This document shows positions 8,252 to 63,164 of a stretch of 64,000 bases of DNA, one piece after another. The translations under genes and the position numbers were made by a program. Where the stretch lies: positions 62,001 through 126,000 of IMG/VR virus record IMGVR_UViG_3300040801_001224. The stretch is one strand, 5' to 3'. The first letter of the stretch is position 1; each line of letters opens with the position of its first letter. Under the pieces are notes generated by a model. The model was not told the origin of the DNA, did not search any database, and saw only the letters and a program-made list of their open reading frames with translations.

Positions 8252-8767
8252 TTAGAATTTATACTTAGATTCCCAACCTTCAGTAAGGGCTCTCTTGTTA
8301 GGGAGCCTTTTCTTTTGGATACGTGATATGCTGTACTTCTTTTCTAGTTCCGTTTCCGGCTTTAATTTGAACTTCATGTTAGCGATCATACCATTATAAT
8401 AAGCTGGTGTGCCATCCGGGAGAGTAGCTCTGAGTACGTCTTCAACAATCTGTAATTCTACTTCCCTATAATGTAGTGAAGCTTTGGATTCGTGAAGTGA
8501 TTCAATTAGGAATGTGAATTGTTCTTTTCCCCTCTTTTCAATCTCCTCCTTCAACCATTTGGACGAGCTACAATAAGACTTCCAATCAGATTCCTTGATT
8601 ACACGTTTGCGGTTCTTGCGACCTTTCACTATTTTACGGCGAGTACTGAAGAAGAATTTTTTTCCAATATACTGCATGCCAGTTTCATTATCAATTATTC
8701 GATAGATGAAACCAACCCAATCTTCTATATTAAATTCTCTGGGATATTCCCAATGACCCATATCCAT
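8252..8767 (-). CDS. GIY-YIG nuclease, T4 endonuclease II (DenA)-like
   Basis: GFIYRIIDNETGMQYIGKKFF, ESDWKSYCSSS, REVELQ..DVL, YYNGMI. Confidence 0.75.
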   Translation of the reverse strand: MDMGHWEYPREFNIEDWVGFIYRIIDNETGMQYIGKKFFFSTRRKIVKGRKNRKRVIKESDWKSYCSSSKWLKEEIEKRGKEQFTFLIESLHESKASLHYREVELQIVEDVLRATLPDGTPAYYNGMIANMKFKLKPETELEKKYSISRIQKKRLPNKRALTEGWESKYKF

Positions 8768-8896: not shown

Positions 8897-9775
8897 ATCA
8901 TAAAAGGAATTCCTGGTTTTATTGTTTCCAGGCCAAAAAAAATTACTCAACGCCCATTCAAAATATATAGACAATTTAAAACGCACTAACAAGTGGCATC
9001 GTGGCAGGAAGGTAAAAGTCCTGCACCTTACGAGGCCGGTACAGGGATGTATGCGGTCGGATGTGTTTGGTAGCCACCTACGTCAGGAACTACGTAGTAA
9101 ATATAAGGACCGACCAACACTACACAAGTAAACCGGCTGAGGAGCCGACAAGAATTGCCACACAGACACAGACAACTGATAACTTGTGTGAGTACTTGAG
9201 TAGATCGAGGTCAGAAAGATTATGCTCTGGCAGAAAAAGAGTTAGGTCCGGCCTAACGCCAACATAGGGCTATATAGCTTTTAGAACTCCAACACAGGGT
9301 TATATAGTTTGCGGCATTTTCCGTCACAACGGAATCGGAGTCACTAATGGGATGATGGTGCCCGCCCAGCGTAGTATTAGCGTTTGTACTGTAGTCGTGG
9401 TGTTATGGAGTGGCACACTGCATTGAAATGTGCTTTTTTTAAACTTCGCCGGCAACGGCGAAGCTATGGCTTCTACAATGAAATGAATAGGTCATTAGGT
9501 CATATGATAAAAATCTTCTTTCCCCTTTAAGTATAATCGAATCTTTAGAACAAAGCCGATAGGCGAAGTGATAAAGATGAAGATTAAGGCCTTTAGGCCT
9601 TTTCACTATTACCCATAATAATGTTAATGACTCTGAACTACTTCGTGTGTTATAGCGCACGATGATGTTCTGATTAAAAATATCAAGACCTTTCAGAGAT
9701 CTTTCCGACAAAAAAAATTGAGTTAAATGGGAATCGTCACCCGGCGATTAAGCCGGGATCAGATTGGCTGAGGAG
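8897..9775 (+). ncRNA. Candidate large structured non-coding RNA (alternatively a replication-origin region)
   Basis: About 0.88 kb with no credible CDS in an otherwise gene-dense genome; many nested inverted repeats, e.g. CTTCGCCG-GCAA-CGGCGAAG at 9444-9463; follows a consensus promoter. Confidence 0.45.
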
Positions 9776-10291
9776 CTATTTCCACTCACGACGTGAGTAT
9801 AATCTTTTGATGTTCTTAGCGAGGTCTTCGTCAGTAATTGCTTCTGCAAAGTCTTTGTTGATATGCATGTTTACAGCGACCACGTCATCACCGACGCTAT
9901 CGAATGAAACGATACCGCTGAATTTCTTGTAAACTGTGGTAATGAAAGCACCTATGCGTAGTTCTAAGCTACCACGGATTTCTTCTTCAAAGTCAAAGGT
10001 GTCTCTTGGCGCATGGGCGATCCATTTGATTTCGCCTTTATTGATTGCCACATATGTGGTTAGTTCATCACCCTTTAGTTGCTTAGTATATATCTTACCA
10101 GTATAGCCTTCAATGTTATAGGCATCATGCTTGACGTTAAATTTATCGTCTGCAAATGGTTGCCATTCAACATGTTGGAAGTCAAACAAGATTGAAGTCT
10201 GTTGTACCTTATTAAACTTTGGGTACTGTGTCCATGCTTCAACACTTGTTTGTGGACTTTTCTCTACTATAATGTCTGTTATGTCTGTCAT
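9776..10291 (-). CDS. Hypothetical protein
   Basis: 171-aa ORF continuing the minus-strand operon; no recognised motif. Confidence 0.6.
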   Translation of the reverse strand: MTDITDIIVEKSPQTSVEAWTQYPKFNKVQQTSILFDFQHVEWQPFADDKFNVKHDAYNIEGYTGKIYTKQLKGDELTTYVAINKGEIKWIAHAPRDTFDFEEEIRGSLELRIGAFITTVYKKFSGIVSFDSVGDDVVAVNMHINKDFAEAITDEDLAKNIKRLYSRREWK

Positions 10292-19880: not shown

Positions 19881-21548
19881 ATGAACGAACGAGAACAAAT
19901 TATAGAACTTATCAAACAAAAACCAAAACATGTAACACAAATTATTAAAAGAGATGATCGGTTATCGATGTATGTATCGGATAATAAAAGAGTTAGTTCG
20001 GCTATATACGCAGAAGAAGTGTATTCGGCTATATACCCAGAAACAACGAACATATGTCCTAATAATAACTTAAAAAAGTTTAAATCGATTAAAGCCGGTT
20101 ATGCTTTTTGTGGCAGGGCAAACTCGTGCGAATGCGCTCGAAAGTCTGTGTCAGATAGTGTGTCGGCGAGTAAATCGAAATTTACAGATAACGATATATT
20201 AAATATTAACCGCAAACGAGAAGCAACCAATATAAAAAAATACGGAGTAAGCAATGTTGGACAGACAGCAAAAGCCAAAGCCAATCACCAAGCATATTAC
20301 GCAGACGACAATAATGTGTCTAAAACTGTTAAACAAATCGAACAAACAAAATTAGATAATTGGGGCAATAAGCATTATAATAATAGTCAGCAAATATCCT
20401 CTACCTGGCGGCAAAAGTCAGATAACGAAAAACAAAGAATAACCAAACAACGATTAAAAACGTATGCTGATAAGTATGGAGATAAGTCACTTCACCTTCT
20501 TCAGTCTTGGTATGATAAATTATGTGATTTTTTCGAAACTCACTACGATGTCAGTATGCTAACAAGCAAAGAAGAATACGTGGGTGTAAGTAACCAACAA
20601 TATTACGAGTTTAAGTGTAATAAATGCGAAGCAGAATTTACTACATACATAGATAATGGCCATCCGCCAATTTGTAAAAAATGTAATCCATCTCCTAAGT
20701 CTCAACCAGAACAAGATATACATGATTGGCTTGTAATGCATGGCATAGATCACGAGATGAACAACAAAACTATTTTAGATGGCAAAGAACTTGACATATA
20801 CATACCGGAAAAAAATATAGCAATTGAATATTGCGGTCTATATTGGCATTCGGATTTTCATAGTAGGATTGACAAATGGTATCACTACGACAAATGGAAA
20901 CAATGCCGAGACAAGAACATCCATCTTATAACTATATTCTCAGACCAATGGGTTCATAAGCGTGATATTGTACTTAAACGTCTTGAAACTAAATTAAAGA
21001 TAAATGTTAAATCTATCGGGGCTCGGAAAACACGTATACGCGAACTAACGAACACAGAAGAAAAAGAATTCTTCTTATTTAATCACATACAAGGCTACAA
21101 TCCAAGTAGAGTGGCTTATGGTTTAATAGAAAATGGCGAAATTGTAGCGGCCATGAGTTTTAAAAAGGTAAGATACCATAGCAAAGATTTATCAAAGGAC
21201 GACTGGGAATTACTAAGGTTTGCTTCATGTAAAAATGTGCAAGGCGGTGCAAGTAAACTTTTTAGGCATTTTATTAAAACAGTCGCCCCTTCGAAAATAG
21301 TTAGTTATAGTGATAATGACTGGAATACAGGGGGATTATATGAACAACTAGGGTTTACGTTGTCGAGGATTAGTGGACCATCATACTGGTACGCCAATGT
21401 CAACGATGATATTAGGTATCATCGGTTTAATTTTAGGAAGAAGGACACCGACCCTGACATGCCAGAAAATCAACGTGTATTTGAATCGCATAAATATCTA
21501 AGGTTTTGGGATACAGGCAATACTCGTTGGATATGGCAAGCCAGTTAA
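19881..21548 (+). CDS. Hef-like homing endonuclease (PD-(D/E)xK/Vsr-like nuclease plus GNAT/Mom-like C-terminal domain)
   Basis: CNKC...CKKC Zn ribbon; ELDIYIPEKNIAIEYCGLYWHS; NHIQG, WELLRFAS, GGASKLF, SYSD...GGLYEQLGF; own GATAAATA at 19848-19855. Confidence 0.75.
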   Translation: MNEREQIIELIKQKPKHVTQIIKRDDRLSMYVSDNKRVSSAIYAEEVYSAIYPETTNICPNNNLKKFKSIKAGYAFCGRANSCECARKSVSDSVSASKSKFTDNDILNINRKREATNIKKYGVSNVGQTAKAKANHQAYYADDNNVSKTVKQIEQTKLDNWGNKHYNNSQQISSTWRQKSDNEKQRITKQRLKTYADKYGDKSLHLLQSWYDKLCDFFETHYDVSMLTSKEEYVGVSNQQYYEFKCNKCEAEFTTYIDNGHPPICKKCNPSPKSQPEQDIHDWLVMHGIDHEMNNKTILDGKELDIYIPEKNIAIEYCGLYWHSDFHSRIDKWYHYDKWKQCRDKNIHLITIFSDQWVHKRDIVLKRLETKLKINVKSIGARKTRIRELTNTEEKEFFLFNHIQGYNPSRVAYGLIENGEIVAAMSFKKVRYHSKDLSKDDWELLRFASCKNVQGGASKLFRHFIKTVAPSKIVSYSDNDWNTGGLYEQLGFTLSRISGPSYWYANVNDDIRYHRFNFRKKDTDPDMPENQRVFESHKYLRFWDTGNTRWIWQAS

Positions 21549-49831: not shown

Positions 49832-49860
49832 TTGACAATGCCACTATTATATAGTATACT
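49832..49860 (+). promoter_or_regulatory. sigma70-type promoter for the GGDEF-EAL operon
   Basis: TTGACA (49832-49837), 17 bp, TATACT (49855-49860); a TATAAATA lies just upstream at 49820-49827. Confidence 0.8.
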
Positions 49861-49920: not shown

Positions 49921-50055
49921 ATGTTGTATAAGAGTGATTATGTTTCTGAAGAAGAACGTAAAGATATTGAAAAAGCGTACAGTAGCAAAAAACAGAAACG
50001 TAAGTTACAAAATACAATACCTGTAAAAGGAAATGACAGAAGAAGTCAGAATTAA
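49921..50055 (+). CDS. 44-aa basic upstream ORF overlapping the GGDEF-EAL start (not in ORF track)
   Basis: AAGGAGG (49907-49913), 7 nt, ATG; MLYKSDYVSEEERKDIEKAYSSKKQKRKLQNTIPVKGNDRRSQN*. Confidence 0.55.
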   Translation: MLYKSDYVSEEERKDIEKAYSSKKQKRKLQNTIPVKGNDRRSQN

Positions 50056-52009
50056 TTTTTATAAGATTGCTCTTGTATACTGGGTAGTGTTTGCTCTATT
50101 TGAGCTTCTGATGCACAGCATTTATATGAGTGGAGCAGGCGCTTATAGCAAAGTTGCCATCGTCGAAGCGATTTTATTTATATCTGGCATTGTGCTAACA
50201 ATACTTGCCAAAAATTCTCTCAAAGACGAAAGCAAAAAGATATATGATGAGCAGTATGAGAGAAAGATCAGGGATCTAGCATCACGTTCACCAACAATGG
50301 GAAGTGACGAATATTTCTCAGTCCTAACAAAAAACATTATTGATGCTGTTGGCTGTGATTATGTTGTTATTGGACAAATAAATTATACTGATAATACTAG
50401 TAAACCATACATAACAACTAAGTCAGCTCGTGGTAGAAATAGAGAGTATCTCCAAACTGAAGTATTATTAAAGACGAGCAACTGTCAAGTAACTGTTCAG
50501 GACATTGAAGATGCTGACCTATCTAGAATATTTAAGGGCAAAAAAGGCAGACACATAAACATGCCACTAGTGTCTAGTGATAACGATATCCATGGTATCC
50601 TGTCTTGTATTTGGATCGGCCCTGATCATCCGCCCAAAACTGCCAAAAACGTACTCAAAATATTTTCGACACAGTGTCAGTCAGAACTTGAGCGATTACT
50701 TACTGAAGAAAAACTTAAATATCAGGCAACTCACGATGAGTTAACTGGCCTACCAAATCGAAACTTTGTAATGGAAAAGTTAAAAGGTATAGTTACTAAA
50801 TACAATTCGGGTGTCATAACTAATAAAACATATAACGTTTATTTTATTGACCTGGATGATTTTAAAGAAGTTAATGACGAATTTGGGCATGACGCTGGCG
50901 ACCAGTTATTAGTGGAGATATCAAGAAGATTGGAGTCATGTGTGAGGGAAGAAGACACGGTGGCAAGACTAGGAGGCGATGAGTTTGTTATTGTTGAAGC
51001 AGGATCAACGAATGTTTCTTCAATTTCGCTATCAGATAGAATTATCAATAAATTACAGCAAGCCGTAAATCTTCATGACAACGTTTCTGTTACCGTGACT
51101 GCTTCAGTCGGGCATTTATGTATTCCTGAAGATTCACAAGATGTGACTGAAATATTCAAGTATGCTGACTTTGCCATGTATTACGCTAAATCACTGGGTA
51201 AGAATGTTGGTGTTAAATTTACTCAAGAACTATTCCGTGATTGTCAGCAAGAAAAAGTTATTGAAGGAAAGCTCATTAGTGCCATTGAGAATAAAGAAAT
51301 TGACATGGCCATCCAGCCAATTGTTGATCATAATCAAAAGATAGTGAAAGGTGAGGTACTGGCAAGATGGTTCTCAGATGACATTAGTCTAACAATTGAA
51401 GATGTGATTAACATTGCTGAGAGACGTGGCCTTATCGTTGCGTTCAGTAAACACATATTTGAAAAGTCAGCTGAATACTGCTCAGAACTTAAATTCGAAC
51501 ATGGCATTTATGCTAGACTCGCTGTTAACTGCTCGCCACTACTGTTTAAGGATCCAGAGTTTGTGCCATATATTTCCAGTGTGTTTGATAAGTATAACAT
51601 AAGTCCTAAACAAATTACTCTTGAAATTACAGAGTCAGTAGCAAGTAAGCACAAGGAAATATTGCCTACTATTGTCGACTTAAAGAGTAGGGGATTTGAA
51701 CTGGCACTTGACGATTTCGGCAAGGGATATTCATCATTGAGTTTTCTAGAAACCTTGCCAATTGATGTAGTGAAACTTGATAGGGCATTGGTTACAGACG
51801 CAATTGGCAACAAGAAGAAGTCTACATTATTGAAAGCCGTAGCTGAGATTTGTAAGGTGTATGAATACAAGTTGGTTGCCGAGGGAATTGAAACTAAAAA
51901 AGACTTTGAGTTTTTGAAAAAATTGGGGTATGACTGGCTACAAGGATATTACTTTTCTAGACCGGTACCATCAGAAGAATACACAAAGTTATTGACACAG
52001 GAGAAATAA
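50033..52009 (+). CDS. Membrane-anchored GAF-GGDEF-EAL diguanylate cyclase / phosphodiesterase
   Basis: Two N-terminal hydrophobic helices; HDELTGLPNR, FIDLDDFKEVNDEFGHDAGD, REED I-site, RLGGDEF; EVLARW, VNCS, LEITES, DDFGKGYSS, VKLDR, AEGIE, LQGYYFSRP. Confidence 0.95.
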   Translation: MTEEVRINFYKIALVYWVVFALFELLMHSIYMSGAGAYSKVAIVEAILFISGIVLTILAKNSLKDESKKIYDEQYERKIRDLASRSPTMGSDEYFSVLTKNIIDAVGCDYVVIGQINYTDNTSKPYITTKSARGRNREYLQTEVLLKTSNCQVTVQDIEDADLSRIFKGKKGRHINMPLVSSDNDIHGILSCIWIGPDHPPKTAKNVLKIFSTQCQSELERLLTEEKLKYQATHDELTGLPNRNFVMEKLKGIVTKYNSGVITNKTYNVYFIDLDDFKEVNDEFGHDAGDQLLVEISRRLESCVREEDTVARLGGDEFVIVEAGSTNVSSISLSDRIINKLQQAVNLHDNVSVTVTASVGHLCIPEDSQDVTEIFKYADFAMYYAKSLGKNVGVKFTQELFRDCQQEKVIEGKLISAIENKEIDMAIQPIVDHNQKIVKGEVLARWFSDDISLTIEDVINIAERRGLIVAFSKHIFEKSAEYCSELKFEHGIYARLAVNCSPLLFKDPEFVPYISSVFDKYNISPKQITLEITESVASKHKEILPTIVDLKSRGFELALDDFGKGYSSLSFLETLPIDVVKLDRALVTDAIGNKKKSTLLKAVAEICKVYEYKLVAEGIETKKDFEFLKKLGYDWLQGYYFSRPVPSEEYTKLLTQEK

Positions 52010-52012
52010 AAA

Positions 52013-52378
52013 ATGGAATTTGAAAAGCCGAGTTATACTTATAACGCAACACTTTTGAAAGTTATTGATGGTGATACGATTGATGTAATGATTGATTTGG
52101 GTTGCTACACAAGCGTAAGAAAGCGTCTACGCTTCTTAGAGATTGACACTGAAGAATTGCGTGATCGTGATATTGAACGTAGAGAAGATGCGGCAGAAGC
52201 TAAAGAAAGAGTTACTAACTTATTGGAAAATGCTGATAAAATATATGTTCAAACCGTTATGGATTCAACAGGAAAATATGGGCGTCTATTAGCTTATGTT
52301 TGGTATGAAGATGAGTACGGTGTACAGAATTTAAATACTCAATTGTTGAGGGAAGGCTTCCAGAAGAAACCTAGATAA
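52013..52378 (+). CDS. Staphylococcal-nuclease (SNase/thermonuclease)-like protein
   Basis: VIDGDTI, RLRFLEIDTEE, GKYGRLLAYVW. Confidence 0.85.
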   Translation: MEFEKPSYTYNATLLKVIDGDTIDVMIDLGCYTSVRKRLRFLEIDTEELRDRDIERREDAAEAKERVTNLLENADKIYVQTVMDSTGKYGRLLAYVWYEDEYGVQNLNTQLLREGFQKKPR

Positions 52379-55898: not shown

Positions 55899-56693
55899 AT
55901 GTCCAGTTTTCTTGAAATCCGCAATGTTGTGGCTAAAGAAATCGACTTAAACAATTGTGATAAAAAATATGATCACAAATATTTCTTAGCATCAATGTAC
56001 TTTGCCCAGCTAGTCTATTTTCGATGGGAGTTTGTCATCTGTTCATTGAAGTCTTTACCTGGTTATGTTTCTCATGAAATATATGATATAGATGGCGTCC
56101 AAGCATTCATGGTAGAATTTGAGAAAACAGCGTGGGTGTCATTCCGTGGCACTGAAATGAAGATCAACGACTGGAAAACAATCCTTAAATTTTGGCAAAA
56201 CGACTACAATAATACTGAAGCTCATGATGGCTTTGCCAGTGCGTTGAGTAAGATCAAAGATCCCGTACTTCGAAAAATTACACAAATGCGAGTAGCTGGC
56301 AAGAGAATACATTTCGTTGGCCATTCAATGGGTGGCGCTCTAGCTACCCTGTTGGCAATTACCCATAAGCCGGAATCCTTAATTACTTTTGGTTGCCCTA
56401 GAGTACTTAAAGGTGATTACTATAAAGAATACTTTCTTTCATTCCCATTTTTTAGAATGGAAAAGCAATGGGATCCTATCACACACATTCCGTGGGCAAT
56501 GCCATTCATCACAACATATAGACATGTTGGCAAGGCGATTGAAATGCCGGGTGAATTTGCCTTCATAAAAAATCATTTCATCAAATCATATTTAAGAACA
56601 GCATTGAACGAATACTATGCTGAATCAACTGGTATCCCAACATCTTTCGCCAGAGTATCAGCAAGAGATCTAAAGCGTATAAAATCATCTTGA
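55899..56693 (+). CDS. Class 3 lipase (alpha/beta hydrolase)
   Basis: VSFRGT, HDGF, VGHSMGGALA nucleophile motif, TFGCPRV, DPITHIP. Confidence 0.9.
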   Translation: MSSFLEIRNVVAKEIDLNNCDKKYDHKYFLASMYFAQLVYFRWEFVICSLKSLPGYVSHEIYDIDGVQAFMVEFEKTAWVSFRGTEMKINDWKTILKFWQNDYNNTEAHDGFASALSKIKDPVLRKITQMRVAGKRIHFVGHSMGGALATLLAITHKPESLITFGCPRVLKGDYYKEYFLSFPFFRMEKQWDPITHIPWAMPFITTYRHVGKAIEMPGEFAFIKNHFIKSYLRTALNEYYAESTGIPTSFARVSARDLKRIKSS

Positions 56694-56939: not shown

Positions 56940-57413
56940 ATGAGTAAAGAAATCGAACGAAAGTTTTTAGTAAATCAGAAACAATTGCCAGCATTATTTG
57001 ATCCAGACTATATCATCCAGGGATATTTACATTCTGATGAAAACAAATCAATCCGAGTGCGTGTCAACAGTGATGGATATAATGCTAAAGGCACACTGAC
57101 AGTTAAGAGTCGTCGTGTAGGCTTAACCTGTGACGAATATGAATATGAAATCCACCCAGACGATGCTCAAGAAATGCTTGATAATATGTGTGACAAAACA
57201 ATGTGTAAAGAACGCTATTACATCAAGCACGATGATCATATGTGGGAGATTGACGTGTTCCAGGGTGATAGTGAAGGGCTTGTTATTGCTGAAATAGAAC
57301 TGTCTACTGAAGGTGAGAAGTTTCCATTTCCAGACTGGGTTGATGCCGAGATATCAGATGATCCCAAGTATTTGAATGTCAATTTATTGGAAAATCCTTA
57401 TAAAAATTGGTAA
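56940..57413 (+). CDS. CYTH-domain (triphosphate tunnel) enzyme, CyaB-like
   Basis: EIERKFL (ExExK), IQGYL, IRVR, EYEYEI, KERY, WEIDVF, AEIEL, PDW..EISDDPKY. Confidence 0.92.
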   Translation: MSKEIERKFLVNQKQLPALFDPDYIIQGYLHSDENKSIRVRVNSDGYNAKGTLTVKSRRVGLTCDEYEYEIHPDDAQEMLDNMCDKTMCKERYYIKHDDHMWEIDVFQGDSEGLVIAEIELSTEGEKFPFPDWVDAEISDDPKYLNVNLLENPYKNW

Positions 57414-57542: not shown

Positions 57543-58358
57543 ATGATTACTATTAATTCAAACACATTGGCTTCATCTATTAGTAATAACTTTAATAGTA
57601 TTAGCAAGCGCATCGATGATGTTTCACGTTCAATTGCGTCAGGCAAGAGAATTAACTCAGCTAAGGATGACCCTGCTGGCTTATTCCAAGCAAACGCATT
57701 ACGCACACAGACGAGCTCATACAACGTAGTTCGCAATAACTTAACATTTGGTACTTCACTATTGGAAACAGCAAGTTCAGCATTAAGCACAGTCGTAAAT
57801 GACTTGGGCAAGATGCGTGACCTAGCTGTCCAGGCGGCAAGTGGCACACTTTCAACAGAAGGTCGTGCGGCACTACAGGCAACATTTGCAGAATACCAGT
57901 CACAGATTGATGATACGGTATCTAACGCATCAGTATTCGGCCAGAACTTAGTTTCGGCGGCCGCGGCAGATGTTGATATCCAGTCAGGCATCAACGCAGG
58001 TCAGACAACTACCGTTACAGCGGCGGCTTCAGATGCTACGACATTGGGTGTTAATGCGTTAGACTTAACTTCAGAAGCAAATGCGTCAGCGGCTATCACA
58101 GCCATTGATACTGCTATTGCTACGGCCGGTACTAACCAGTCTACGTTTGGTGCCCAGTTAAATCGCATTGAATCAATTGACGCAAATGTGGCTAACATTG
58201 TTGAAAATTTAGAATCAGCACGTTCACGTATTGAGGATGCTGATGTAGCACAGCTAACAACAGACCTAGCACAGTTGCAGGTTCAACAGCAGTTAGCGTC
58301 AGCAATGTTAGGAATTGCTAACCAGTTACCACAGAGCTTCTTAACACTATTACGTTAA
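57543..58358 (+). CDS. fliC: Flagellin (minimal, D0/D1 only)
   Basis: SGKRINSAKDDPAG, MRDLAVQAASGT, FGAQLNR, NLESARSRIEDAD, ANQLPQSFLTLLR. Confidence 0.95.
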   Translation: MITINSNTLASSISNNFNSISKRIDDVSRSIASGKRINSAKDDPAGLFQANALRTQTSSYNVVRNNLTFGTSLLETASSALSTVVNDLGKMRDLAVQAASGTLSTEGRAALQATFAEYQSQIDDTVSNASVFGQNLVSAAAADVDIQSGINAGQTTTVTAAASDATTLGVNALDLTSEANASAAITAIDTAIATAGTNQSTFGAQLNRIESIDANVANIVENLESARSRIEDADVAQLTTDLAQLQVQQQLASAMLGIANQLPQSFLTLLR

Positions 58359-58371
58359 AGGGTGAATAACA

Positions 58372-58722
58372 ATGGACGTTGGCCAAGTTAAATCACAGTA
58401 TAGCTTAGTAGCAGGGAATAAAGGAGACATCAAACCTCCCGAGCCTCCTAAAGGAACTGCTACTGAACCGCTCGTTCGTGATTACAGCATTGAAGAGATG
58501 CAGGATTTGGCTCGGGCGGCAAATGCTTCTATGCCCAATAGTAGTATTCGTTTTAAGATTGATGAACAAGGCGAGCCGCCTATCATTGTCATTATTGATC
58601 CAGAAACAGATGAAATAGTAAGACAGATACCTCCAGAAGAGATTCAAAATATCAGAGATATGGTTGAGTCTCTTCAAAATGGAGAAAGTTACATAACTAA
58701 TTTTATAGATAGGTACGCATAA
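58372..58722 (+). CDS. flaG: FlaG-like flagellar protein
   Basis: IRFKIDE...IVIIDPETDEIVRQIPPEE; directly after flagellin. Confidence 0.88.
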   Translation: MDVGQVKSQYSLVAGNKGDIKPPEPPKGTATEPLVRDYSIEEMQDLARAANASMPNSSIRFKIDEQGEPPIIVIIDPETDEIVRQIPPEEIQNIRDMVESLQNGESYITNFIDRYA

Positions 58723-62078: not shown

Positions 62079-62453
62079 GGCGTTCGGATAAGGGCTGGTA
62101 TCCCGGAGAACTCACTGGCTGAAGAAGCTATAGACCTCCTTAAGTGCCATTGCGTAAAGCATAAATCAGTTCGCCGTTTTAATTCGATGAAGTAATTTAA
62201 TGATACTGTGGACGCCAGTTCGAATCTGGCCATCTCCACCAAATCTATGGGGATGAATTAGGTTTCGACAGGGTATACTGAGAATTATGGAGAATCAGTC
62301 AATGCTAAAGGCTGTGAGGATTGGGAGTAACACCTTTAATGGTGCTCGGTCGAAGAAGCAAAAAAATAATTGAAAATGATGAAATTTTCGCATTAGCGGC
62401 ATAGACCGTTAACGGGGTTTTACACCGTCTTCCTTGTTATCAAAAGACGGTGT
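62079..62453 (+). ncRNA. ssrA: Circularly permuted (two-piece) tmRNA; outer boundaries approximate
   Basis: T-arm GCCAG-TTCGAAT-CTGGC plus CATCTCC-A-CCA ends at 62241; 7-nt spacer; GGGGATG starts at 62249 (G3.U pair); tag ORF ENDEIFALAA* at 62372-62404. Confidence 0.9.
62422..62453. terminator. Hairpin at the tmRNA 3' end, overlapping the convergent gene stop
   Basis: ACACCGTCTT (62422-62431) / AAGACGGTGT (62444-62453). Confidence 0.6.
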
Positions 62454-63096
62454 CTTTATGTATGCTATAGTGTTGGCGTAACCCGTTCACTGACTTTTCT
62501 TCTCCGCAAATAATACAAGAACATTTTATTCTGCTACTATTATTTTTAGAAATTTTTTCTCTGGTAGTTTTGGATAATTTTCTTCCCTTCCCTTGCCCAG
62601 TGCGATCTATGTTTCTTATCTTCGGGTCATGCATTGGGTTGTTGTTTTTTAATCGTTCCGAAGCTTGCCGGCGTTGTTCGTTAGTCCATTCGTACCCTCC
62701 ACCACCTGGTCTAGATACTCCTTTATTTGACTCAGATATTTTTCTTTTGTGTTCTTCAGAAAAAGATCGTCCAGTATTGGCCTGACTTATTGTTTTTTTG
62801 TGTTCGTCAGATATTACCCTCGGTCCACCATCTGTTCCGTTTTCTATAGCAAGATTTGCCCATTCTTTTGATTCTACGATTTGGTTTAGCTTTGAAAAAA
62901 GTGTAGAAAATCTTTTTAGCTTTTCTAAGCTTTTGAATTCCTTATACCACAAGGTATCGATAAATTTGCCGTGTTTCTTGATGTGACGTAACCAGTATTT
63001 GCCCGATCCGGCATATTTAGTCGGCTCATTTTTTGTCTTGCCGAAATATTTGAGCCCGGTTTTCTGGTGCTGTTTTATATATAGATAAATACTCAT
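62440..63096 (-). CDS. GIY-YIG (Seg-like) homing endonuclease with NUMOD3-like repeats
   Basis: IYLYIKQHQKTGLKYFGKT, YAGSG, WANL..ENG..GG, SDEHKKTIS / SEEHKRKIS; likely start MSIYLY at 63096 after AGGAG. Confidence 0.8.
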   Translation of the reverse strand: MSIYLYIKQHQKTGLKYFGKTKNEPTKYAGSGKYWLRHIKKHGKFIDTLWYKEFKSLEKLKRFSTLFSKLNQIVESKEWANLAIENGTDGGPRVISDEHKKTISQANTGRSFSEEHKRKISESNKGVSRPGGGGYEWTNEQRRQASERLKNNNPMHDPKIRNIDRTGQGKGRKLSKTTREKISKNNSSRIKCSCIICGEEKSVNGLRQHYSIHKDTVF

Positions 63097-63100
63097 GCTG

Positions 63101-63164
63101 ATACTCCTATTCAGTATTAGAGTAGTCGGATACGCCAATATCGCGGACTACATTTTTATTTATC
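63101..63164 (-). promoter_or_regulatory. Late promoter plus structured leader of the homing endonuclease
   Basis: GATAAATA (- strand, 63157-63164); GTAGTC/GACTAC stem with inner GATA/TATC; competing TACTC/GAGTA stem over the RBS. Confidence 0.5.

What the first reader, a model, noticed from the sequence alone, without database searches (positions are those of the whole stretch)
50033..52009. Phage-encoded, apparently intact c-di-GMP cyclase/phosphodiesterase with a sensor domain
Seen: two TM-like helices, a GAF-like region, a GGDEF domain with active site and RxxD I-site (REED-5 aa-GGDEF), and an EAL domain retaining EVL, N, E, DDFGxGYSS, K, E and Q catalytic positions. It is behind a phage early-type promoter and directly after the tail-fibre block. 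Known: c-di-GMP governs the motile/sessile switch, flagellar function and surface polysaccharides, and in E. coli is needed for the N4 receptor glycan. Such full-length enzymes are typical of bacteria, not of lytic phages, to my knowledge. Inference: the phage rewires host c-di-GMP early in infection to change motility, dispersal or receptor display.
Basis: partly seen in the sequence, partly recalled or inferred. Interest (0 to 1): 0.85.

Follow-up and report, generated by a model that had tools for sequence, protein, structure and literature searches.

The report
Jumbo-phage sensor-linked c-di-GMP cyclase/phosphodiesterase gene
An uncultured 328-kb phage, and at least four related phage lineages, carry an intact membrane-anchored sensor enzyme of the kind bacteria use to make and break the signalling molecule c-di-GMP, so these phages probably take over the host's swim-or-stick switch early in infection.

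Summary
ORF 50033..52009 (+) is intact (658 aa). It has two TM helices, a GAF-fold domain, a GGDEF domain (Pfam E 2.6e-39; REED-5 aa-GGDEF) and an EAL domain (E 2.1e-56) with every catalytic position kept.

It is not a chimera. Eight homologues form a separate clade (SH-aLRT 100). The four looked up for context, at 66, 42, 32 and 33% identity, lie in the same phage synteny: GGDEF/EAL, then SNase, a minus-strand ~128-aa gene, a ~100-aa gene and rIIA. Their divergence tracks that of rIIA. Codon usage matches the window. No close cellular homologue was found; the best bacterial hit is 36-39% identical over GGDEF-EAL only.

A TTGACA-N17-TATACT promoter lies 173 nt upstream and is conserved in the closest relative. 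Seven such sites occur in the window against 0.03 expected.

Direction of catalysis cannot be read from sequence. My best guess is a GAF-gated, GTP-dependent net phosphodiesterase, like RmcA/PA0575, its closest solved relative. A bifunctional or net-cyclase role remains open.

The enzyme is an ordinary family member. The carrier, a conserved jumbo-phage lineage, is unusual and I found no description of it. A phage flagellin-FlaG pair 5.5 kb downstream supports a motility theme.

The parts
49832..49860 (+). Sigma-70-type promoter TTGACA-N17-TATACT, 173 nt upstream of the ATG
   Evidence: Seven perfect sites in the window against 0.03 expected, all on the + strand. The -35 and -10 boxes and the 17-nt spacing are conserved in relative L001 while the spacer sequence differs.
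49921..50055 (+). Small upstream ORF (about 44 aa) with a strong Shine-Dalgarno AAGGAGG. It overlaps the start of the enzyme gene by 23 nt.
   Evidence: A 43-aa ORF is called at the same place in L001-L003, with a GAGGAGG Shine-Dalgarno. Its function is unknown. It is not found in the more distant relatives.
50033..52009 (+). Intact 658-aa gene: 2TM - GAF - GGDEF - EAL
   Evidence: AlphaFold2 mean pLDDT 78.7. Best Foldseek match in the PDB is RmcA/PA0575 GGDEF-EAL, 5m3c_B, TM 0.88 by target.
50057..50212 (+). Membrane hairpin: TM1 aa 9-31 and TM2 aa 39-60, joined by a loop of about 7 residues, so there is no periplasmic sensor domain
   Evidence: Hydropathy and model helices.
50216..50641 (+). 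Cytoplasmic GAF-fold sensor domain (aa 62-203). Cys192 is invariant in all members with an N-terminus.
50642..50731 (+). Long signalling helix (aa 204-233) linking GAF to GGDEF. E218, R221, E225 and L228 are invariant.
50726..51205 (+). GGDEF domain (aa 232-391). I-site R305-E-E-D308 is at nt 50945-50956 and the A-site G314-G-D-E-F318 at nt 50972-50986.
51278..51964 (+). EAL domain (aa 416-644) with E441xLxR445, N499, E531xxE534, D560-D561-FGKGYSS, K581, E617/E620 and Q637
52013..52378 (+). SNase-like nuclease (121 aa), the downstream partner in every lineage examined: directly adjacent in four, separated by one 85-aa gene in L004
   Evidence: Pfam SNase E 6.1e-09. 61-74% identical in L001, L004, L010 and L012. 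Its start overlaps the enzyme's stop in L010 and L012.

Best explanation
This is a genuine, vertically inherited jumbo-phage gene for a membrane-tethered, signal-gated enzyme of c-di-GMP turnover.

Proposed working:
1. Host RNA polymerase transcribes it from a sigma-70-type promoter, probably early, together with a small upstream ORF and the SNase gene.
2. A two-helix hairpin holds the protein at the inner membrane, with all domains in the cytoplasm.
3. A GAF domain with an unknown ligand (one invariant cysteine) signals through a long helix to the GGDEF-EAL pair.
4. The EAL domain hydrolyses host c-di-GMP to pGpG. The GGDEF domain binds GTP and either only licenses the phosphodiesterase, as in RmcA and RbdA, or also makes c-di-GMP under the right signal.
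5. My best guess is net depletion of c-di-GMP. That would keep the infected cell motile and unattached and cut matrix production.

Shown here: the domains, the motifs, phage residence, conservation and the promoter motif. Inferred: timing of expression, catalytic activity, its direction and the physiological pay-off.
For: Intact domains and residues.

All catalytic residues of both domains are invariant in nine family members that are only 31-66% identical.

Same synteny in L001-L003, L004, L010/L011 and L012.

Divergence tracks neighbouring phage genes. The enzyme is 66/42/32% identical and rIIA 61/40/31%.

The family is one clade with SH-aLRT 100 and a stem of 1.05 substitutions per site, apart from 70 other homologues that I take to be bacterial.

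Only the family itself matches the whole N-terminal module at E<1e-30 among 1.84 billion representatives.

The best match in 185,579 species genomes is 36% identical over aa ~206-658 only.

GC3 is 0.325 against a window mean of 0.324, and codon-usage r is 0.82.

pN is 0.14-0.33 against pS 0.73-0.88 versus L001.

Promoter evidence.

Phosphodiesterase leaning:
- The closest solved relative by sequence (E 1.5e-65) and by fold (TM 0.88) is RmcA/PA0575.
- RmcA and RbdA have both domains intact plus an I-site, yet predominantly behave as phosphodiesterases, with no c-di-GMP synthesis detected in vitro, and GTP binding increases that activity (PMC10874727).
- EAL is the most conserved domain: 77% identity to P0002, against 69% for GGDEF and 51% for the sensor.
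- The I-site is lost in 4 of 9 family members but in only 5 of 111 of the nearest other homologues.
- A flagellin-FlaG pair lies downstream.
Against: No activity, expression or host data exist.

An invariant GGDEF A-site with all GTP/Mg-binding residues, and an I-site kept in five members from both deep branches, would also fit a real cyclase. MorA and MucR, with the same motif set, are bifunctional.

The GGDEF domain alone scores best against active cyclases such as TpbB/YfiN.

Loop 6 carries a rare Lys (DDFGKGYSS), seen in 2 of 111 homologues.

A consensus promoter directly upstream is seen only in the window and L001, not in L004, L010 or L012.

Confidence: 0.55

Rival explanations
1. Net diguanylate cyclase. 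The phage raises c-di-GMP early to brake the flagellar motor, hold the infected cell among susceptible neighbours, change surface polysaccharide or receptor display, or exclude superinfection. The EAL domain would serve as a signal-dependent off-switch.
For: GGDEF, D273, K278, N281, D290, R312 and K386 are invariant in nine members. An RxxD product-inhibition site sits exactly five residues upstream in this protein and in four others from both deep branches. The GGDEF domain alone is most similar to active cyclases. MucR and MorA, with the same motif set, synthesise c-di-GMP in vitro.
Against: The EAL catalytic set is equally invariant and the domain is more conserved. The closest characterised relatives with this motif set, RmcA and RbdA, predominantly act as phosphodiesterases and made no c-di-GMP in vitro. 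The I-site is dispensable in 4 of 9 members. A co-resident flagellin-FlaG pair sits oddly with shutting motility down.
Confidence: 0.25
2. Anti-defence enzyme. The EAL domain destroys a cyclic-dinucleotide alarm signal, for example c-di-GMP made by CBASS systems with STING-type effectors, rather than reprogramming behaviour.
For: Phages are known to degrade or sequester defence nucleotides (abstracts listed). That c-di-GMP-sensing STING effectors exist in bacteria is from my own knowledge and was not checked here. The gene lies in an early region next to a nuclease.
Against: An intact cyclase domain would itself make the alarm signal. The PADLOC scan gave no match. The canonical TTGACA/TATAAT promoters, the flagellin and the tmRNA point to a proteobacterial, flagellated host, where c-di-GMP is a housekeeping messenger. 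A membrane anchor and a GAF sensor are not needed for a scavenger.
Confidence: 0.07
3. Catalytically silent c-di-GMP/GTP receptor or scaffold, like LapD or FimX.
For: Tandem GGDEF-EAL proteins are often degenerate receptors. LapD appears among the structural matches. One distant member, P0234, has a degenerate loop 6, DDFGTGTATLS.
Against: In this protein and seven relatives every catalytic and metal-binding residue of both domains is retained at 31-66% identity. LapD matches are far weaker: E about 1e-21 and 18-21% identity, against 1.8e-36 and 32% for RmcA.
Confidence: 0.05
4. Artefact: bacterial DNA joined to a phage contig by mis-assembly, or a recent accidental capture with no function.
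For: The gene type is typical of bacteria. The window comes from a metagenomic assembly.
Against: Independent assemblies from ENA, Logan and JGI samples show the same gene order in several phage lineages. Divergence parallels rIIA. Codon usage and GC3 are those of the phage. No cellular homologue above 39% identity was found.
Confidence: 0.01

Closest known systems
RmcA / PA0575 of Pseudomonas aeruginosa (PDB 5m3c), a GTP-dependent GGDEF-EAL phosphodiesterase
   Same: Best sequence match among solved structures (E 1.5e-65, aa 234-651) and best fold match (TM 0.88 by target, rmsd 2.9 over 426 columns). It has the same RxxD-5-GGDEF arrangement, ExLxR, DDFGxGYSS, EGxE and QG motifs.
   Different: 32% identity. 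RmcA has a periplasmic domain and PAS sensors (literature). The phage protein has a bare 2TM hairpin plus one GAF domain. RmcA is chromosomal and bacterial.
MorA (PDB 4rnh/4rnf) and MucR of P. aeruginosa, bifunctional GGDEF-EAL enzymes
   Same: Tandem domains with both motif sets intact (E 2e-63). The inactive DD-to-NN mutant 4rnf aligns to D560-D561.
   Different: 30% identity, other sensor modules, bacterial. These enzymes show both activities in vitro, which is why direction cannot be assigned here.
RbdA / PA0861 (PDB 5xgb) and DosP (PDB 9cmf)
   Same: Sensor-GGDEF-EAL layout with a helical linker. RbdA's phosphodiesterase is GTP-stimulated and it has an I-site.
   Different: PAS or heme sensors instead of GAF. 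23-25% identity in the structural alignment.
YIP peptides of PB1-like Pseudomonas phages (PMC8085984)
   Same: A phage-encoded way of changing host c-di-GMP, motility and biofilm.
   Different: YIPs are small peptides that bind the host cyclase YfiN. Here the phage carries the enzyme itself.
Single-domain GGDEF or EAL genes in phage records (Bacillus phage G gp350, Bacillus phage SP-15, Citrobacter phage Chris1), the Mu-like virus DGC of the Cariaco Basin (PMC7785012), and PHROG 11823
   Same: c-di-GMP-type domains on viral genomes.
   Different: Those matches cover only 24-37% of the protein, a single domain. None has the 2TM-GAF-GGDEF-EAL layout or the SNase/rIIA synteny. I could not trace the source genomes of PHROG 11823.

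Membership tests
GGDEF-domain diguanylate cyclases (PF00990) | Domain match above the curated cut-off | tested here: met
   135 bits against a cut-off of 23.8, aa 232-391, full profile length.
GGDEF-domain diguanylate cyclases (PF00990) | A-site GG(D/E)EF plus Mg/GTP-binding residues. PleD D327, K332, N335, D344, R366 and K442 are equated with D273, K278, N281, D290, R312 and K386; the PleD numbering is from my own knowledge. | tested here: met
   GGDEF at 314-318. All listed residues are present and invariant in nine family members.
GGDEF-domain diguanylate cyclases (PF00990) | Allosteric I-site RxxD five residues before GGDEF (present in many cyclases but not all) | tested here: met
   R305-E-E-D308 + TVARL + GGDEF. 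The site is kept in 5 of 9 family members and in 106 of 111 nearest other homologues.
GGDEF-domain diguanylate cyclases (PF00990) | Synthesis of c-di-GMP from two GTP by a dimer | not testable with these tools
   Needs an enzyme assay. RmcA and RbdA show that an intact motif set does not guarantee synthesis.
EAL-domain c-di-GMP phosphodiesterases (PF00563) | Domain match above the curated cut-off | tested here: met
   191.4 bits against a cut-off of 31.3, aa 416-644.
EAL-domain c-di-GMP phosphodiesterases (PF00563) | Catalytic and metal-binding set: ExLxR, N, ExxE, DD, K, E, Q | tested here: met
   E441/L443/R445, N499, E531/E534, D560/D561, K581, E617/E620 and Q637. They align to RmcA and MorA and are invariant in nine members.
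EAL-domain c-di-GMP phosphodiesterases (PF00563) | Intact loop 6, DFG(T/A)GYSS | tested here: met
   DDFGKGYSS. Only the variable position differs, and Lys occurs there in 2 of 111 homologues. Six of the seven other family members have T there with loop 6 otherwise intact. The distant member P0234 also has T but a degenerate loop 6, DDFGTGTATLS.
EAL-domain c-di-GMP phosphodiesterases (PF00563) | Hydrolysis of c-di-GMP to pGpG | not testable with these tools
   Needs an enzyme assay.
GAF sensor domains | GAF fold (six-stranded antiparallel sheet backed by helices) | tested here: met
   ESM Atlas TM 0.74-0.83 to GAF models. Foldseek hits in the PDB are almost all GAF domains at probability 1.00, E from 3e-5, for example PtsP GAF at TM 0.61-0.67 by target. 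Model pLDDT in the domain is only about 60-85.
GAF sensor domains | Match to the Pfam GAF models (PF01590, PF13185, PF13492) | tested here: not met
   No GAF family at E<=0.01. A family profile does reach bacterial GAF domains at E down to 1.5e-28.
GAF sensor domains | Known ligand signature, such as the NKFDE motif of cNMP-binding GAFs (from my own knowledge) | tested here: not met
   No such motif in aa 62-225 on reading the translation. The ligand is unknown. Cys192 is invariant.
Hypr-GGDEF (cGAMP-making) enzymes | Ser instead of Asp at the base-recognising position, PleD D344 (from my own knowledge) | tested here: not met
   Asp290 in the HDAGD motif, invariant in the family.
Degenerate GGDEF-EAL receptors (LapD, FimX type) | Loss of catalytic motifs with retained nucleotide binding | tested here: not met
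   All motifs are intact. LapD matches are weak.
Phage genes of this jumbo-phage lineage (not host DNA) | Conserved position among phage genes in independent genomes, with divergence parallel to theirs | tested here: met

The most novel reading that the evidence does not exclude
A lineage of uncultured jumbo phages steers the behaviour of the infected cell with its own signalling and motility kit. The kit would comprise a sensor-gated c-di-GMP enzyme inherited for a long time with the phage, a phage flagellin and FlaG in this phage, and possibly chemoreceptor (MCP) and CheW genes on phage-like contigs that carry related flagellins. The infected cell would then swim, or stop, on the phage's terms before lysis.
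Probability: 0.25. Interest if true: 0.85.

Novelty: new member of a known kind. Interest (0 to 1): 0.6.

Why it matters
c-di-GMP decides whether a bacterium swims or settles, and how much matrix and which surface structures it makes.

Phages are known to depend on these traits, and one phage peptide family (YIP) is known to act on a host cyclase. A complete sensor-coupled enzyme kept by a phage lineage through divergence down to about 31% identity would be a different case. It would mean the phage measures something in the infected cell and resets the messenger itself.

Such a gene gives a tractable handle on how virocell behaviour is controlled, since it can be expressed and assayed without the uncultured phage. 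It also adds second-messenger enzymes to the list of jumbo-phage auxiliary genes. I found nothing on this in the two recent jumbo-phage reviews and one large-scale survey I checked.

Tried and rejected
- Megablast of the gene and of a 20-kb structural block against GenBank phages gave no match. The phage has no close cultured relative. Its major capsid protein is 78.6% identical to that of PA5oct.
- I tried to find the empty site in a cultured relative through rIIA and through the 128-aa neighbour. rIIA is at most 32% identical to anything in the collection. The 128-aa protein hits only Sinorhizobium phage Phosso, which has no synteny. The 'empty slot' comparison was therefore not possible.
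- L001, L002 and L003 have nucleotide-identical genes, so they give no synonymous-site test. dN/dS against L001 is limited by saturated dS.
They are not exhaustive.
- The IMG/VR scan added only the window's own contig and the L004 contig as full-length relatives.
- PADLOC found nothing for the enzyme.
- Two reviews I wanted for the motif definitions (PMC3591986, PMC6092375) are not held. Residue numbering in PleD and RocR is therefore from my own knowledge.
- Host assignment failed. The named flagellin homologues are at most 42% identical and taxonomically scattered.
- The upstream small ORF gave no tblastn hit outside the DNA alignment with L001.
Full report
**What is there**

The window is positions 62001-126000 of a 328,096-bp IMG/VR contig, IMGVR_UViG_3300040801_001224. 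It encodes the following phage genes:
- a T4-type portal protein and major capsid protein;
- a T4 baseplate protein and a gp15-like tail sheath stabiliser;
- tail fibres and rIIA;
- homing endonucleases.

The capsid protein is 78.6% identical to that of Pseudomonas jumbo phage PA5oct and 68-70% identical to those of Sinorhizobium phage Phosso, Pectobacterium phage CBB and a Vibrio jumbo phage. No DNA-level match exists in 50,697 GenBank phage records.

ORF 50033..52009 (+) is a single open frame of 658 aa.

**Check of the observation**

- **TM segments.** Two hydrophobic segments, aa 9-31 and 39-60, pass a Kyte-Doolittle threshold of 1.6. They are modelled as helices joined by a seven-residue loop. 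The protein therefore has a membrane anchor but no periplasmic domain.
- **GAF region.** Residues 62-203 do not match Pfam's GAF models, but they have a GAF fold by three routes. ESM Atlas gave feature score 0.93 and TM 0.74-0.83 to GAF models. A profile of the N-terminus hits the GAF domains of large bacterial sensor proteins. Foldseek of a separate N-terminal model returns almost only GAF structures.
- **Linker.** A long helix, aa 204-233, leads into the GGDEF domain.
- **GGDEF.** Pfam E 2.6e-39, with R305-E-E-D308, five residues, then G314-G-D-E-F318.
- **EAL.** Pfam E 2.1e-56, with E441xLxR445, N499, E531xxE534, D560-D561-F-G-K-G-Y-S-S, K581, E617/E620 and Q637. Each aligns to the same residue of RmcA and MorA. 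The catalytically dead MorA variant 4rnf differs from 4rnh exactly at the two aspartates that align to D560/D561.
- **One oddity.** Lys follows DDFG, where most relatives have Thr. Lys occurs there in 2 of 111 homologues.

**Phage gene or artefact**

The search of 5.8 billion proteins found six full-length or near-full-length relatives at 42-66% identity. Below them there is a sharp drop to bacterial multi-domain proteins that match only the GGDEF-EAL part at 31-39%.

A profile of the N-terminal 2TM-GAF module, run against 1.84 billion representatives, found only the family itself at E<1e-30. It also turned up two more distant members, P0142 and P0234, at 31-33% identity over nearly the whole length.

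I looked up the contigs of four of these relatives, and the gene order repeats in all of them:
- GGDEF/EAL;
- SNase (in L004 one 85-aa gene intervenes);
- a minus-strand gene of 124-133 aa;
- a gene of about 100 aa;
- an rIIA-like gene of 710-745 aa (cut off by the contig end in L012);
- usually a class-3 lipase and a CYTH protein.

Upstream lie tail-fibre genes or other phage genes (RtcB, cREC, a GIY-YIG endonuclease).

Identity of the enzyme to its relatives is 66, 42 and 32%. That falls in step with rIIA at 61, 40 and 31%. On a tree with 70 other homologues, the nine family proteins form one clade (SH-aLRT 100) on a stem of 1.05 substitutions per site. GC3 (0.325 against a window mean of 0.324) and codon usage (r 0.82) are those of the phage.

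The gene was therefore present in the common ancestor of these phages and has stayed.

**Selection**

All catalytic and ligand-binding residues of both domains are invariant across the nine members. Against the closest relative, non-synonymous differences per site are 0.14-0.33 and synonymous differences are saturated at 0.73-0.88. EAL is the most conserved domain and the sensor the least.

The I-site is kept in five members from both deep branches and lost in four. The nearest other homologues keep it in 106 of 111 cases.

**Expression signals**

A TTGACA-17 nt-TATACT site lies 173 nt upstream. Exact TTGACA-N17-TATAMT sites occur seven times in the window, all on the + strand, against 0.03 expected. 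One precedes rIIA, a classic early gene, and that site is identical in the relative L001. Four of the seven share CCACT just after the -35 box.

The site in front of the enzyme gene is conserved in L001 in both boxes and in spacing, although the spacer sequence differs. This supports transcription by unmodified host polymerase and hence early expression, but the timing itself is an inference. The more distant relatives have no such site directly upstream.

Between the promoter and the gene lies a 44-45-aa ORF with a strong Shine-Dalgarno sequence. It overlaps the enzyme's start codon and is also present in L001-L003.

**How it probably works**

The anatomy is that of a cytoplasmic-signal sensor. 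The order is membrane hairpin, GAF, signalling helix, GGDEF, EAL.

The closest solved relative by both sequence and fold is RmcA/PA0575. According to PMC10874727:
- RmcA and RbdA have both domains intact and an I-site, yet predominantly behave as phosphodiesterases with no c-di-GMP synthesis in vitro, and GTP binding to the GGDEF domain increases that activity;
- MorA and MucR, with the same motifs, are bifunctional in vitro.

Sequence alone therefore cannot give the direction. I favour a net phosphodiesterase at about 45% of the total. My reasons are the RmcA relationship, the higher conservation of EAL, the relaxed I-site, and the presence of a phage flagellin-FlaG pair, which fits a strategy of keeping the cell motile. 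A net cyclase or a true two-way switch remains a serious alternative.

A Hypr-type (cGAMP-making) GGDEF is unlikely because the base-selecting residue is Asp290 (the rule is from my own knowledge). A silent receptor is unlikely because no motif is degenerate.

**Comparison with what is known**

The enzyme is an ordinary member of the GGDEF-EAL family, and GAF-GGDEF-EAL proteins exist in bacteria (P0200, P0227). What is unusual is the carrier.
- In GenBank phages the only real matches are single domains: GGDEF in Bacillus jumbo phages G and SP-15, and EAL in Citrobacter phage Chris1. The remaining hits are bacterial or contaminated records and short unannotated faecal contigs.
- PHROG 11823 matches the tandem part. 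I could not trace its source genomes.
- A virome paper reports a cyclase on a Mu-like virus (PMC7785012).
- PB1-like phages change c-di-GMP through YIP peptides that bind the host cyclase YfiN.
- Neither a 2021 comparative study of 224 jumbo phages, nor a 2026 review, nor a 2026 large-scale survey mentions phage c-di-GMP enzymes in the main text.
- Phrase searches for phage-encoded cyclases or EAL enzymes found nothing else.

**Side observations that bear on function**

- Window 57543..58358 encodes a complete flagellin and 58372..58722 a FlaG homologue. The closest relative, L001, lacks both and keeps only a 43-aa remnant of the next gene.
- The flagellin belongs to a series of about 60 unnamed metagenomic proteins of 271-284 aa at 47-84% identity. 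Named bacterial flagellins reach only 42%.
- Two of these that I looked up lie in phage-like runs of small same-strand genes. One sits beside FlaG, the other near a chemoreceptor gene and cheW. I did not verify that those contigs are phages.
- A permuted tmRNA (Rfam RF04321, 95.6 bits) lies at 62181..62404.

**Verdict**

The enzyme is a new member of a known kind. The phage lineage that carries it, and the motility genes beside it, make it worth an experiment.

Noticed in passing
window 57543..58358 (+) and 58372..58722 (+): The phage encodes a complete flagellin (Flagellin_N 1e-25, Flagellin_C 4.8e-18) directly followed by a FlaG homologue (2.9e-12). The closest relative, L001, lacks both. 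There was no tblastn hit in GenBank phages and no paper with the phrase 'phage-encoded flagellin'. About 60 unnamed metagenomic relatives exist at 47-84% identity.
   Followed up: partly
L174:7240-8546 and L175:1547-3698, 9001-9822: Flagellin relatives (66% and 49% identical) lie in phage-like runs of small same-strand ORFs. L174 carries flagellin, FlaG, PAAR, WYL_2 and Peptidase_S8. L175 (a 96.8-kb contig) carries a chemoreceptor gene (4HB_MCP_1 + MCPsignal) and cheW, plus RNA ligase, Thy1 and an RNaseH-like gene. I did not verify that these contigs are viral.
   Followed up: partly
window 62181..62404 (+): Permuted (two-piece type) tmRNA: Rfam RF04321, 95.6 bits, E 2.8e-17. ARAGORN predicts the tag peptide ENDEIFALAA. 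It lies between a 124-aa minus-strand ORF and a NUMOD3 homing-endonuclease ORF and overlaps the end of the former. It may hint at the host, because to my knowledge permuted tmRNAs are typical of Alphaproteobacteria, some Betaproteobacteria and cyanobacteria.
   Followed up: partly
window 52013..52378 (+): A small SNase-like nuclease (121 aa) follows the GGDEF/EAL gene in all five lineages: directly in four, after one 85-aa gene in L004. It is 61-74% identical among them, and its start overlaps the enzyme's stop in L010 and L012. The DGDT, R..DTEE and YGR motifs appear to be kept. Whether it is functionally linked, for example by clearing pGpG or degrading host DNA, is unknown.
   Followed up: partly
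window 3426, 8862, 49832, 53632, 56690, 60221, 63172 (all +): Seven exact TTGACA-N17-TATAMT promoter-like sites against 0.03 expected. Four share CCACT three to four bases after the -35 box. The rIIA site is 29/29 identical in L001, although the proteins are only 61% identical.
   Followed up: partly
window 49921..50055 (+): Small ORF (about 44 aa) with a strong Shine-Dalgarno AAGGAGG between the promoter and the enzyme gene, overlapping the enzyme's start codon. It is also present in L001-L003. It has no family match.
   Followed up: partly
window 55899..56693 (+) and 56940..57413 (+): A class-3 lipase / alpha-beta hydrolase and a CYTH-domain protein (the triphosphate tunnel metalloenzyme family) are conserved downstream of rIIA in L001-L003 and L004 (the CYTH gene lies beyond the end of the L003 contig). 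CYTH is another possible nucleotide-signalling enzyme.
   Followed up: no
window 19881..21548 (+), 8252..8767 (-), 62440..63138 (-): Three homing-endonuclease-type genes: an HNH/homing endonuclease directly after the major capsid gene, a SegE-like GIY-YIG gene, and a NUMOD3-containing ORF.
   Followed up: no
window 50606..50608 (Cys192 of the enzyme): Cys192, in a G-x-x-x-C-x-W strand of the GAF domain, is the only GAF-core residue besides Gly188 that is invariant in all members. Cys108 and Cys215 are conserved in the six closer members. This may point to a redox or covalent-ligand site.
   Followed up: no
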